From: Perna viridis
Taxonomy: Eukaryota
Direction: 5' to 3'
Assembly (NCBI GenBank): GCA_037379345.1
Contig: CM074511.1
Coordinates: 66,842,862 to 66,906,861, forward strand
Length of the DNA stretch: 64,000 nt
Part shown: positions 51,801 to 56,052 of the stretch, in pieces
How positions within the stretch are numbered: the first letter of the stretch is position 1
Layout of the letters: every line of letters starts with the position of its first letter
Notes under the pieces: model-generated
Database searches by the model: none
The model's input: the letters and a program-made list of their open reading frames with translations, nothing else
Told to the model about the DNA's origin: nothing
Program-made: the position numbers and the translations under genes

Positions 51801-54800
51801 ATAGCTTGACATCAATTTTTTACAGGTTTGGCCAAAAGGGAAAGTTGCCTTCCCAGACTTTTTAAAAAATGCCACCAACGAAGTCTGGATGTCATTGATT
51901 AAAAAGCATCATGATACAAATCTAACATTTAATGGGTTATGGATTGATATGAATGAACCAGCTAACTTCGATACAAATAAAGACCGAATATGGAACTGGC
52001 CTGAGAAAGATAGGCCATATTGGAGTCTGAAATGTAACAAGGGGGATAAATATGAGGACCCACCATATAGAACAATGGCCACTTTCCTCTATGATGATCG
52101 GAAATCAAATTATTTCAATCGTATCTCTGATAAGACATTATGTATGGTAGCTACACAGGGAGAAAATGCTAAGTATAGGCATTATGATGTTCATAATCTG
52201 TATGGATGGAGCCAATCAAAACCTACATTAGATGCTTTACAGGCTGCAACCGGGAAACAAGGAATTGTCATCTCTCGCTCACCATTTCCTGGTAGTGGAC
52301 AGTATGCAGGACACTGGCTTGGGGATAACTCAGCAGTGTGGGAAGATGTGAAGTTATCAATAATTGGCATCTTAGAATTTAATTTGTTTGGAATACCCTA
52401 CATTGGTGCTGATATCTGTGGATTTTTCGGTGATTCCAATGCCGAACTTTGCAAAAGATGGATGCAGCTTGGAGCATTCTATACATTTAGTCGAAATCAC
52501 AATGGATTGGGTACTATTGATCAAGATCCAGCTGCTTTCAATGATAATGTCACTAAAGCTGCTCGACAAGCTATAGAAACAAGGTACTGGCTGCTGCCAT
52601 ATCTACACACGCTATTTTTCCAAGCACATGGGACATATAATAACTTTGGGAAAACTGTTATTAGACCATTATTCATGGAGTTCTCTGATGATGAAGAGAC
52701 TTATGGTATTGATGAACAATTCTTATGGGGTTCTGCTTTGATGATATCACCCATCCTGAGACAAGGTCAAACAAAGTTAAAGTACTACCTCCCTCAACAA
52801 ACATGGTATGACTGGTATACTTTAAAAGAAGTAAAATACTCTGCCTCAAATTACTATGAGATGAATGTGGATGCAGACTCTCCCATACCTCTTCACATTA
52901 GAGGTGGCTTTGTTATACCAATGCAGACACCAGCCAATAACACACATTTCAGTCGTAAAAACCCAATAACACTGAGAGTGGCTCTGACAAGTGATCAGTA
53001 CTATACATATGCTTCTGGAGTCATATATTGGGATGATGGAGATGGAAAAGATAATTATAAAAATGGAAAATACTTCCAAGGAGTGTTTGCATGTAGAAAT
53101 GGGATGTTGAGTATGGATGTCTACCAAAACTCTACAGAAGGAACACATGGTGTTGTTATCGATAATATTGAAATTTTAGGCATTGACACTAGTTGGGATA
53201 ATGTCTATTTCTATGTCAATGACCAAGAACATCCTCAAGCTAATGTCAACTTTACAAAAGAAAACAATGTTGTTAGAGTCACTAATTTGAATCTGCCACT
53301 TCACAAAACTTTTATTGTTCAGTGGAAAAATAAGAAAATGCAAGAAGATTTATTAATGGAGGCAGTTTCTAGAGTTGATTGTTTTCCAGATATGGATAAT
53401 AAGTCTGATTCTTTCAATCAGAAGAATATGGAGGAATGTATTAGAAGGGGTTGCATATGGGAACCTTTAAATGAAATACCGTCCGCTGCATATTGCTATG
53501 TTAATACGTCAATCTATGGGTACACTCAAACTGGCCGATCCAACTCTACACTTAATGCTGAATTTGTTGATCTTAAATGGAAAAATAAATCTCAAATGTT
53601 TGAAGGTGATATTGAAAATATTCAAATGATCATAACAAGACATTCTGATAAAATATTACAAGTAAAAATTATTGATCCTGCAAATGATAGATATGAGGTT
53701 CCTGTTAACTTTAACAAAATACCAAACAACGAAAAGCCAGAATTTTATACTGTACACCATAATAATGATAAACATGGGATATTTAACCTTAAAGTGCAAA
53801 GGACAAATACATCAACCCTCATATGGGATACGTCTGTAGGTGGACTTACCTATGCTGATCAGTTCTTACAGTTTGTAACAAAACTTCCATCTAAGAATGT
53901 TTATGGTTTTGGTGAAAATAGACACAAGAGTTTCCGCCATAATTTTGAATACCAACGTTGGCCAATGTTTTCTAGAGATAATGGTGTGAACTGGGGAGAC
54001 TATGCCAATCTTTATGGTGTTCATCCATTTTACATGTGTGTTGAAGAGGATGGCAATGCTCACGGGGTTCTGTTGCTAAATAGTAATGCCATGGAGGTTG
54101 TACTTCAGCCCTACCCATCCTTGACATATAGAACAGTAGGTGGCATTCTGGATTTCTATCTGTTCTTTGGACCTACTCCAGAAGATGTTATTAGGCAATA
54201 TACAGGGTCACTTATTGGAAAGCCATACATGCCACCTTACTGGGCACTTGGCTTCCAGCTGTGTAAATATGGCTACAACAATTTGGAAACTTTGAAAGCG
54301 GCAACTGAGAGAACAATTGCAGCAGAAATACCATTTGATGTTCAATATGCTGACATAGATCACATGGATGAGAGAAAGGACTTCACAATAGATACAATAA
54401 AATTTAATGGTCTTTCAGACTATGTAAAAGAGCTGCAAGGTAAAGGGATGCACTTCATCATCATCTTAGATCCAGCATTAATCACCAATGTTACTAATTA
54501 TCCACCATACCAAAAGGGTCTTGAACAAGATGTTTTTATAAAATGGCCGGATAGTACCCATCCAGACTTCAGTGAGTACAACAGAACAGACATGCTGGGC
54601 TATGTTTGGCCTAAAGGTAAAGTTGTTTTCCCTGACTTCCTTAATAATAGAACCCATGAATACTGGAAAGATCTTATTATTGAACATCACAACAAATTAC
54701 CTTTTGATGGTCTCTGGATTGATATGAATGAGCCAGCAAATTTTGGAACTAATGAGGATCGTCCTTTTAATTGGCCTGAGAGTGCTAAGCCCTACTGGAC

Positions 54801-56052: not shown

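What the first reader, a model, noticed from the sequence alone, without database searches (positions are those of the whole stretch)
51826..56052. Half-retroposed gene: about 35 expected introns missing from one 4.2-kb terminal exon
Seen: seven consecutive exons of modules 1 and 2 have the same boundaries and phases (155/155, 175/175, 100/97, 113/113, 126/126, 132/132, 135/138 nt), so the modules were duplicated with their introns. After the acceptor before VWP in module 2, which is exactly homologous to the module-1 exon start at 25926, there are no more introns. Mapping module-1/2 positions predicts 14 more in module 2 and 21 in module 3. Known: recombination with a cDNA primed from the poly(A) end removes adjacent introns precisely and with a 3' bias. 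Inference: one ~4.2-kb cDNA conversion tract overwrote the 3' end in situ. The gene's internal paralogy records the ancestral state, which makes this an unusually large and clean case.
Basis: partly seen in the sequence, partly recalled or inferred. Interest (0 to 1): 0.85.

Follow-up and report, generated by a model that had tools for sequence, protein, structure and literature searches.

The report
Ancient block loss of 36 introns
A mussel starch-digesting enzyme gene keeps all 30 introns in its front half but has none of about 36 ancestral introns in its 4.2-kb last exon, a clean loss shared with oysters, scallops and pearl oysters and best explained by an old overwrite with a spliced cDNA copy.

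Summary
The window holds exons 2-31 of a 31-exon gene; exon 1 lies 0.8-1.2 kb upstream. The gene is expressed and encodes a 2774-aa, three-module GH31 maltase-glucoamylase-like protein. Its closest named relative is Mytilus trossulus (74.7% identity), so the organism is a mytilid.

The last exon (51826-56052) is one open frame of 1408 codons. An RNA contig joins 50704 to 51826 (GT..AG) and then runs unspliced to 56254. DNA contigs from two other studies cross the intron/exon border, so this is not an assembly artefact.

The orthologues in a limpet (Patella) and a clam (Ruditapes) have 35-36 introns in this stretch. Thirty-three sit at the same column and phase in both. The window has no indel of its own at 36 ancestral sites.

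The oyster (Magallana) and scallop (Mizuhopecten) have the same intronless exon starting at the same acceptor. So do a second mytilid and a scallop-like contig. Pearl oyster (Pinctada) DNA is colinear over the block, but its start was not checked. The oyster keeps all 30 upstream introns.

The loss is therefore old, on the pteriomorph stem. It fits cDNA-mediated intron loss. "One tract" is inferred, not shown. I class it as a large new example of a known process.

The parts
51826..56052 (+). Terminal exon 31 (4227 nt including the stop). It encodes the tail of module 2 and all of module 3, and has no introns.
   Evidence: Open frame of 1408 codons. Pfam GH31 TIM barrel 2.3e-172 in two stretches, and GH31 C-terminal domain 6e-58. 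An RNA contig is colinear over 51826-56254, stranded RNA depth is mostly 3-14x with no internal joints, and DNA contigs cover 51776-56300 and 51799-55240.
51826..51945 (+). Interval that must hold the 5' end of the cDNA-derived tract. It lies between retained intron 30 and the first lost intron site.
   Evidence: The acceptor is kept at 51826 in the window, L031, L032 and L033, and in oyster and scallop. The first ancestral intron site maps to nt 51946.
50705..51825 (+). Intron 30, the last retained intron (1121 nt, GT..AG). It contains a high-copy repeat at about 51385-51778.
   Evidence: The joint 50704>51826 is seen in an RNA contig of 5959 nt and in one raw RNA read. DNA depth is 1000-1800 over the repeat.
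50567..50704 (+). Exon 30 (138 nt), the last exon of the intron-containing part.
   Evidence: Junction optimisation. The RNA contig joins it to exon 29 and to exon 31.
44909..50704 (+). Module 2 head, exons 23-30 (298, 155, 175, 97, 113, 126, 132, 138 nt), with all introns kept.
   Evidence: The oyster, limpet and scallop orthologues show the same exon pattern, with small size differences.
735..44353 (+). Module 1, exons 2-22, with all introns kept. Exon 1 (465 nt, start codon and signal anchor) lies outside the window, 772-1236 nt upstream of its first base.
   Evidence: No further module in the 40 kb upstream.
53328..53332 (+). Site of the lost intron between module 2 and module 3. It is one of 36 lost sites.
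   Evidence: All 36 sites by first nt after the site: 51946, 52076, 52233, 52367, 52402, 52519, 52680, 52765, 52822, 52953, 53051, 53101, 53269, 53328/32, 53508, 53668, 53823, 53998, 54095, 54211, 54337, 54469, 54604, 54721, 54848, 54975, 55115, 55150, 55267, 55416, 55501, 55558, 55683, 55772, 55822, 55990.
56053..56254 (+). 3' UTR, at least this far. An AATAAA lies near 56263 and a 15-nt A-rich run at 56288-56302.
   Evidence: The RNA contig ends at 56254 and RNA depth is about 7 in the bin 56113-56300. Sequence. The A-run is not found in the second mytilid's flank, so it is not evidence of a poly(A) remnant.

Best explanation
The gene is the mussel orthologue of a three-module, membrane-anchored GH31 alpha-glucosidase (maltase-glucoamylase / sucrase-isomaltase type) found across molluscs and in an annelid. 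The ancestral gene had 66 coding-region introns.

On the stem of the pteriomorph bivalves, after the split from the clams, a spliced transcript of this same gene was reverse-transcribed from its 3' end. The resulting partial cDNA (at least 4.2 kb) replaced the homologous genomic segment by recombination. Its 5' end fell inside the 117-120-nt exon that now begins at 51826.

That erased all 36 introns downstream and left the 30 upstream untouched. The gene stayed functional and has kept this half-processed structure ever since.

Shown: the structure, its expression, the precision of the losses, their phylogenetic distribution, and the orthology of the modules. Inferred: the cDNA intermediate and that it was a single tract.
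For: 1. The structure is real and expressed. The RNA contig is spliced 50704>51826 and then colinear to 56254. Stranded RNA covers the exon and not the intron. DNA contigs from two other studies cross the border.
2. The ancestral state is read from orthologues. Patella has 67 exons, with 36 introns in the homologous stretch. Ruditapes has 35 real introns there. Thirty-three sites share the same column and phase in both. The same exon sizes recur in the window's own module 1.
3. The losses are precise. The window has no gap within 7 residues at 35 of 36 sites. The one exception is a 1-residue gap also present in both outgroups.
4. The losses form one block up to the 3' end, while the oyster keeps 30/30 upstream introns with limpet-like exon sizes. 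The random-arrangement probability is 1.8e-19.
5. The same block and the same acceptor are found in Magallana (last exon 4128 nt), Mizuhopecten (4161 nt), a second mytilid (L031/L032) and a scallop-like contig (L033). Pinctada DNA is colinear over 4.1 kb, but its start was not checked.
6. In a module tree, pteriomorph tail 2 groups with the clam and freshwater-mussel tail 2 sequences. Pteriomorph tail 3 falls in the shared tail 3 clade. So the template was the gene's own transcript, not a paralogue.
7. The gene is under constraint. pN is 0.17-0.27 against a saturated pS of 0.79-0.86. WIDMNE and HWLGDN are intact in all three modules.
8. The RT model predicts exactly adjacent, 3'-biased, precise loss (PMC3652778).
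Against: No trace of the intermediate survives or could be expected to: there is no conserved poly(A) remnant or target-site duplication.

A single tract is only the most parsimonious reading. The stem branch is not broken up by any sampled taxon. Ark shells, freshwater mussels and protobranchs could not be examined, because the Sinanodonta and Solemya gene ranges exceed 100 kb and no DNA was served.

Germline expression of this digestive-type gene, which the model requires, is untested.
Confidence: 0.8

Rival explanations
1. Several successive cDNA conversions, each anchored at the 3' end and reaching further 5', removed the 36 introns in steps on the pteriomorph stem branch rather than in one tract.
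For: The RT model allows repeated events in a gene that produces many transcripts. No taxon sampled here subdivides the stem branch (searches gave no DNA for Sinanodonta or Solemya).
Against: The four pteriomorph lineages whose border was examined share the identical 5' border. Not one of the 30 upstream introns has been lost in the oyster since then. Background loss in the outgroups is only about 3 fused exon pairs among 66 introns in two lineages. Several independent hits on one short branch are therefore unparsimonious.
Confidence: 0.14
2. A 5'-truncated, LINE-made retrocopy of the transcript inserted into or next to the gene. The original 3' genomic part was then deleted, creating a chimeric gene.
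For: Retroelements with reverse transcriptase are present, even in intron 16 of this gene (RVT_1 1.1e-19). A short A-rich run follows the poly(A) signal.
Against: The intronless part starts exactly at an ancestral intron position and phase, with the ancestral acceptor. A random truncation point would not give this. No target-site duplication or conserved poly(A) is present. The module tree shows ordinary orthology.
Confidence: 0.04
3. The introns were removed one by one by genomic deletion or microhomology-mediated end joining.
For: Such mechanisms are documented for single introns (PMC3698931, listed).
Against: This needs 36 exact, in-frame deletions, all contiguous, with none among the 30 upstream introns. 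The arrangement probability is 1.8e-19, and there are no residual indels.
Confidence: 0.01
4. Artefact: cDNA contamination or mis-assembly of the reference, or intron gain in the clam and limpet instead of loss here.
For: None found.
Against: DNA contigs from two other studies, one a gut metagenome, span the intron-exon border and the exon. Five other species' assemblies show the same structure. The 'gained' positions would have to coincide with the intron positions of modules 1 and 2 in every species.
Confidence: 0.01

Closest known systems
Reverse-transcriptase (mRNA-mediated) intron loss: recombination of a spliced, 3'-primed cDNA with its own gene (model reviewed in PMC3652778)
   Same: The removal is precise, the lost introns are adjacent, the losses are strongly biased to the 3' end, the gene stays at its own locus, and the upstream introns are retained.
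   Different: The scale differs. Here 36 contiguous introns and a tract of at least 4.2 kb are involved. The multiple losses reported for rat and mouse in PMC3652778 are small groups within a gene. The event is also very old and has been kept in several bivalve orders.
Semi-processed (partially processed) genes and retrogenes
   Same: Part of the gene looks like cDNA and part looks like ordinary genomic DNA.
   Different: Classical retrogenes sit at a new locus with a poly(A) tail and target-site duplications, and usually lack all introns. This one is in place, continuous with its own 5' exons, and has no insertion hallmarks.
Vertebrate maltase-glucoamylase and sucrase-isomaltase (two-module GH31 brush-border enzymes)
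   Same: An N-terminal membrane anchor, trefoil plus GH31 catalytic modules in tandem, and conserved WIDMNE and HWLGDN motifs.
   Different: There are three modules instead of two (2774 aa). About 41-43% identity to vertebrate proteins over the two 3' modules. Substrate specificity of each module is unknown.

Membership tests
GH31 maltase-glucoamylase / sucrase-isomaltase-type alpha-glucosidase | GH31 TIM-barrel catalytic domain plus the GH31 C-terminal domain | tested here: met
   PF01055 2.3e-172 (two stretches) and PF21365 6e-58 in the terminal exon alone.
GH31 maltase-glucoamylase / sucrase-isomaltase-type alpha-glucosidase | Catalytic nucleophile motif WIDMNE and acid/base region HWLGDN. 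The role of these motifs is from my own knowledge of GH31. | tested here: met
   Both motifs are present once in each of the three modules.
GH31 maltase-glucoamylase / sucrase-isomaltase-type alpha-glucosidase | Tandem modules preceded by trefoil (P-type) domains, and an N-terminal signal anchor | tested here: met
   Orthologues carry PF00088 Trefoil. The model starts with a hydrophobic N-terminus. Trefoil was below threshold in the window's own Pfam scan.
GH31 maltase-glucoamylase / sucrase-isomaltase-type alpha-glucosidase | Alpha-glucosidase activity | not testable with these tools
   Needs an enzyme assay.
RT/cDNA-mediated intron loss | Exact removal of introns without indels in the flanking coding sequence | tested here: met
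   No window-specific gap at 36 of 36 mapped sites.
RT/cDNA-mediated intron loss | Adjacent introns lost together | tested here: met
   36 contiguous sites lost and 30 contiguous sites kept.
RT/cDNA-mediated intron loss | 3' bias (tract anchored at the poly(A) end) | tested here: met
   The block runs from 51826 to the stop codon and into the UTR.
RT/cDNA-mediated intron loss | The template is the gene's own spliced transcript | tested here: met
   In the module tree, pteriomorph tail 2 groups with the clam and freshwater-mussel tail 2 sequences, and pteriomorph tail 3 falls in the shared tail 3 clade.
RT/cDNA-mediated intron loss | Germline expression of the gene at the time of the event | not testable with these tools
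   The event is ancient. Present-day gonad or embryo RNA was not examined.
Processed retrogene (LINE-mediated retrocopy) | Located at a new locus, detached from the parental exons | tested here: not met
   It is spliced to its own upstream exons, and the order of exons is the same as in the outgroups.
Processed retrogene (LINE-mediated retrocopy) | Poly(A) remnant and target-site duplications | tested here: inconclusive
   There is only a 15-nt A-rich run in AT-rich flanking DNA, and it is not shared by the second mytilid. The age of the event would have erased such marks.

The most novel reading that the evidence does not exclude
This may be one of the largest single-tract cDNA-mediated intron losses in an animal gene: 36 introns and at least 4.2 kb. 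It was fixed once on the pteriomorph stem several hundred million years ago (date from my own knowledge). It could therefore serve as a rare genomic change that marks Pteriomorphia. It is also a natural benchmark for how long a recombining cDNA tract can be. Whether it is a record was not checked against a systematic survey.
Probability: 0.55. Interest if true: 0.55.

Novelty: new member of a known kind. Interest (0 to 1): 0.45.

Why it matters
The reverse-transcriptase model of intron loss is still tested mostly through weak statistical trends, such as pairs of adjacent losses and a slight 3' bias (PMC3652778). This gene is an all-or-nothing case. 66 ancestral introns are read directly from the limpet and clam orthologues. 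The 36 at the 3' end are missing, precisely, and in the oyster all 30 upstream introns are kept.

The case sets a lower bound of about 4.2 kb on a productive cDNA recombination tract in an animal germline. It shows that a half-processed gene can stay functional over a very long time. It also provides a discrete character for bivalve phylogeny that can be scored in any assembly. It does not reveal a new mechanism.

Tried and rejected
- **Sinanodonta and Solemya:** look-ups gave no DNA because the gene ranges exceed 100 kb. The Owenia and Mya proteins were not on record. Freshwater mussels, protobranchs and the annelid therefore could not be scored for introns.
- **False exon candidate:** I first took 43933-43989 for the last exon of module 1, on weak similarity. 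It has a stop in the required phase. The Mytilus protein showed that the real exon is 44292-44353.
- **Splice mapper:** my exact mapper stalled on scallop and clam. Three junctions have non-canonical splice sites: scallop 19811/20477 and clam 37240/38076 and 59035/59191. I treated them as artefacts of annotation or assembly, not as real introns.
- **dN/dS:** it could not be computed because synonymous sites are saturated. Only pN and pS are reported.
- **Literature:** two full-text searches found no description of this case.
- **Earlier scan notes:** nothing was on record for this place.
- **Poly(A) remnant:** considered and dropped, because it is not conserved.

Full report
**What is there.** The stretch 51826-56052 is a single open frame of 1408 codons. 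It follows a good acceptor (TTTTTTACAG), and the frame opens only 21 nt upstream of it. It encodes the C-terminal part of one GH31 alpha-glucosidase module and a complete second one. The Pfam GH31 TIM barrel scores 2.3e-172 in two stretches, and the GH31 C-terminal domain scores 6e-58.

Searching the window with this protein finds two further, diverged copies of the module upstream, each broken into many small exons. I refined every junction by enumerating GT/AG pairs that keep the frame and maximise the alignment. The guide was first the terminal exon and then the Mytilus trossulus protein.

The result is a 31-exon model:
- Exon 1 lies 772-1236 nt upstream of the window.
- All 30 introns are GT-AG.
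- There is no internal stop and the protein is 2774 aa, the same length as the Mytilus protein.
- The 40 kb upstream holds no further module.

The exon starting at 25926 is the module-1 counterpart of the start of the terminal exon.

The joined model was built only inside local scripts, for the frame check, a motif count, and local alignment and tree building. Database searches used the terminal exon by reference or proteins returned by the tools.

**Is it real?** Yes.
- One RNA-type contig of 5959 nt joins 50566-50704 directly to 51826-56254 (GT..AG, skipping 1121 nt). Its upstream loose end matches the end of exon 29.
- One raw read of a stranded RNA-seq run shows the same joint.
- That run covers the exon at mostly 3-14x on the expected strand, with essentially nothing in the intron and no joint inside the exon.
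- DNA contigs from two other studies, one of them an invertebrate gut metagenome, run from intron 30 into and through the exon (51776-56300; 51799-55240 plus 55222-56184).

**Whose gene is it?** The closest named protein is Mytilus trossulus maltase-glucoamylase-like, at 74.7% identity over the terminal exon. The window therefore comes from a mytilid mussel other than Mytilus.

Three-module proteins of 2700-2820 aa occur in oysters, a scallop, Mytilus, several clams, limpet, abalone, pond snail and the annelid Owenia. The triplication is therefore far older than bivalves.

**The ancestral state, read from orthologues.** I rebuilt exact exon maps for four annotated orthologues from their own genomic DNA.
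- Patella vulgata has 67 exons.
- Ruditapes philippinarum has 67 entries, two of which are annotation splits with non-canonical sites.
- Magallana gigas has 31 exons, the last of 4128 nt.
- Mizuhopecten yessoensis has 32 entries (one artificial split), the last of 4161 nt.

The first 30 exons of oyster and limpet correspond one to one, with nearly identical sizes. They also match the window's exons 1-30.

Downstream of the shared VWP exon start, Patella has 36 introns and Ruditapes 35 real ones. On a protein alignment, 33 sites coincide in column and phase. Three more are ancestral by other evidence:
- One is fused in Ruditapes but present in Patella and in module 1.
- One is fused in Patella but present in Ruditapes and in module 1.
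- The third is the inter-module intron, which aligns two columns apart in the two species.

That makes 36.

At 35 of the 36 sites the window has no gap within seven residues. The single exception is a one-residue gap that both outgroups share. The losses are exact.

**Distribution.** The intronless block, with the acceptor at the same codon, is present in:
- the window;
- a second mytilid recovered from metagenome assemblies (L031/L032, 72% identity), whose contig also carries the three preceding exons and their introns;
- a scallop-like contig (L033, 59% identity to the window and 74-76% to the Mizuhopecten modules);
- Magallana gigas;
- Mizuhopecten yessoensis.

These rest.

In Pinctada imbricata the DNA is colinear with the block over 4.1 kb without intron gaps, though the frame changes several times. 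Its exon start was not examined. Ostrea edulis is implied only by 1339-aa genomic open frames clustered with its 2738-aa protein.

The clam and the limpet have every intron. The loss therefore happened after pteriomorphs separated from the clam lineage and before mussels, oysters and scallops separated. From my own knowledge of bivalve time trees that is roughly Cambrian to Ordovician. Synonymous sites are saturated even between the two mytilids (pS 0.79), which is consistent with great age.

**Where did the template come from?** I built a tree of the 'tail' halves of all modules.
- The pteriomorph tail 2 sequences form one group, which sits beside the clam and freshwater-mussel tail 2 sequences.
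- The pteriomorph tail 3 sequences fall in a well supported clade that holds every sampled bivalve tail 3, together with those of Patella and Owenia.

The intronless DNA is therefore the orthologue of the intron-bearing DNA of other bivalves, module by module. That is what an in-place overwrite by the gene's own transcript predicts. It is not what capture of a paralogue's retrocopy predicts.

In the window's own genome no other copy of this block exists. The other GH31 loci match exon by exon.

**Mechanism.** Five features are shown:
- removal is exact;
- the lost sites are strictly contiguous;
- the block reaches the 3' end;
- the ancestral acceptor and every upstream intron are retained;
- the template was orthologous.

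Together these are the signature of recombination with a partial cDNA primed at the poly(A) end (model and predictions in PMC3652778). The 5' end of the tract must lie between 51826 and 51945.

The cDNA itself is inferred, and so is a single tract. For a single tract speak the identical border in the four pteriomorph lineages whose border was examined, the absence of any loss among the oyster's 30 upstream introns since then, and the low background rate. Only about three fused exon pairs are seen among 66 introns in clam plus limpet. Against certainty: no sampled taxon subdivides the stem branch.

If 36 of 66 introns were lost at independent, random positions, the chance that they are exactly the 36 at the 3' end is 1.8e-19. 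Independent deletion is therefore excluded.

A LINE-type insertion of a truncated retrocopy is unlikely. The border coincides with an ancestral intron position and phase, no insertion hallmarks are conserved, and no relic 3' exons lie in the 10 kb beyond the window, which itself ends 8 kb past the stop codon.

**Function.** All three modules keep WIDMNE and HWLGDN. The protein starts with a hydrophobic anchor. Non-synonymous divergence is 0.17-0.27 against saturated synonymous divergence. The gene is transcribed. It is a working gene, most likely a digestive alpha-glucosidase. The activity itself was not tested.

**Novelty and interest.** The process is textbook, and the case is an extreme, well-dated example. 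Two full-text searches found no description of it. I rate it a new member of a known kind and of moderate interest. It offers a clean benchmark for the reverse-transcriptase model and a discrete marker for Pteriomorphia, but no new mechanism.

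Noticed in passing
window 8907-9078, 16471-16845, 29954-30522, 43349-43441: Four tandem arrays (85 nt x2, 89 nt x4.2, 50 nt x11.4, 40 nt x2.3) each begin inside the 3' end of a coding exon (exons 4, 8, 11, 20). Each runs across that exon's donor site into the intron, so the intron starts with extra copies of exon end plus GT donor. 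That is 4 of about 9 strong arrays in the window, and none spans an acceptor. By rough count this is only mildly more than chance. Which donor is used was not checked with RNA.
   Followed up: partly
window 17786-19453 (-): An intronless 555-aa open frame with B-box zinc fingers and a weak beta-propeller match lies antisense inside the 9.4-kb intron 8. It looks like a nested TRIM-like gene.
   Followed up: partly
window 36544-39291 (+): Two consecutive open frames (336 and 578 aa) lie inside intron 16 on the sense strand. The second has a reverse-transcriptase domain (RVT_1, 1.1e-19). This is a retroelement inside the very gene that lost introns through reverse transcription.
   Followed up: partly
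window 51385-51778: A high-copy repeat in intron 30. DNA contig depth is 1000-1800 against about 60 for the flanks, and several contig breaks and loose ends occur there.
   Followed up: no
window 53305: In the raw RNA run, 6 of 12 reads lack one base in an A4 run just before the module 2/3 linker. These reads have only 2 start points, and the deletion is absent from the DNA contigs. It is probably a duplicate-amplified error. If it were real it would truncate the protein after module 2.
   Followed up: partly
G000:C1:67257394-67257762 and G000:C12:3947558-3948067: Two distant GH31-like matches (27-32% identity) sit in long uninterrupted open frames of 671 and 702 aa elsewhere in the genome. 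They may be other intronless GH31 genes.
   Followed up: no
proteins P0181 (Haliotis) and P0184 (Lymnaea), tail-module tree: In Haliotis two of the three module tails, and in Lymnaea all three, cluster with each other within the species rather than with their positional counterparts in other molluscs. This suggests concerted evolution or separate duplications in gastropods. Bivalve modules are one-to-one orthologues.
   Followed up: no
L045 22458-26569 (Pinctada imbricata): The terminal block is colinear and free of introns, but the matches change reading frame several times and the annotated protein stops short. This points to assembly indels or decay of the gene in this species.
   Followed up: partly
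L042 19811/20477; L044 37240/38076 and 59035/59191: The annotated scallop and clam models contain three junctions with non-canonical splice sites (GT..CG, GT..TT, GC..GG). One sits at a tandemly duplicated exon piece. They look like annotation work-arounds rather than real introns.
   Followed up: partly
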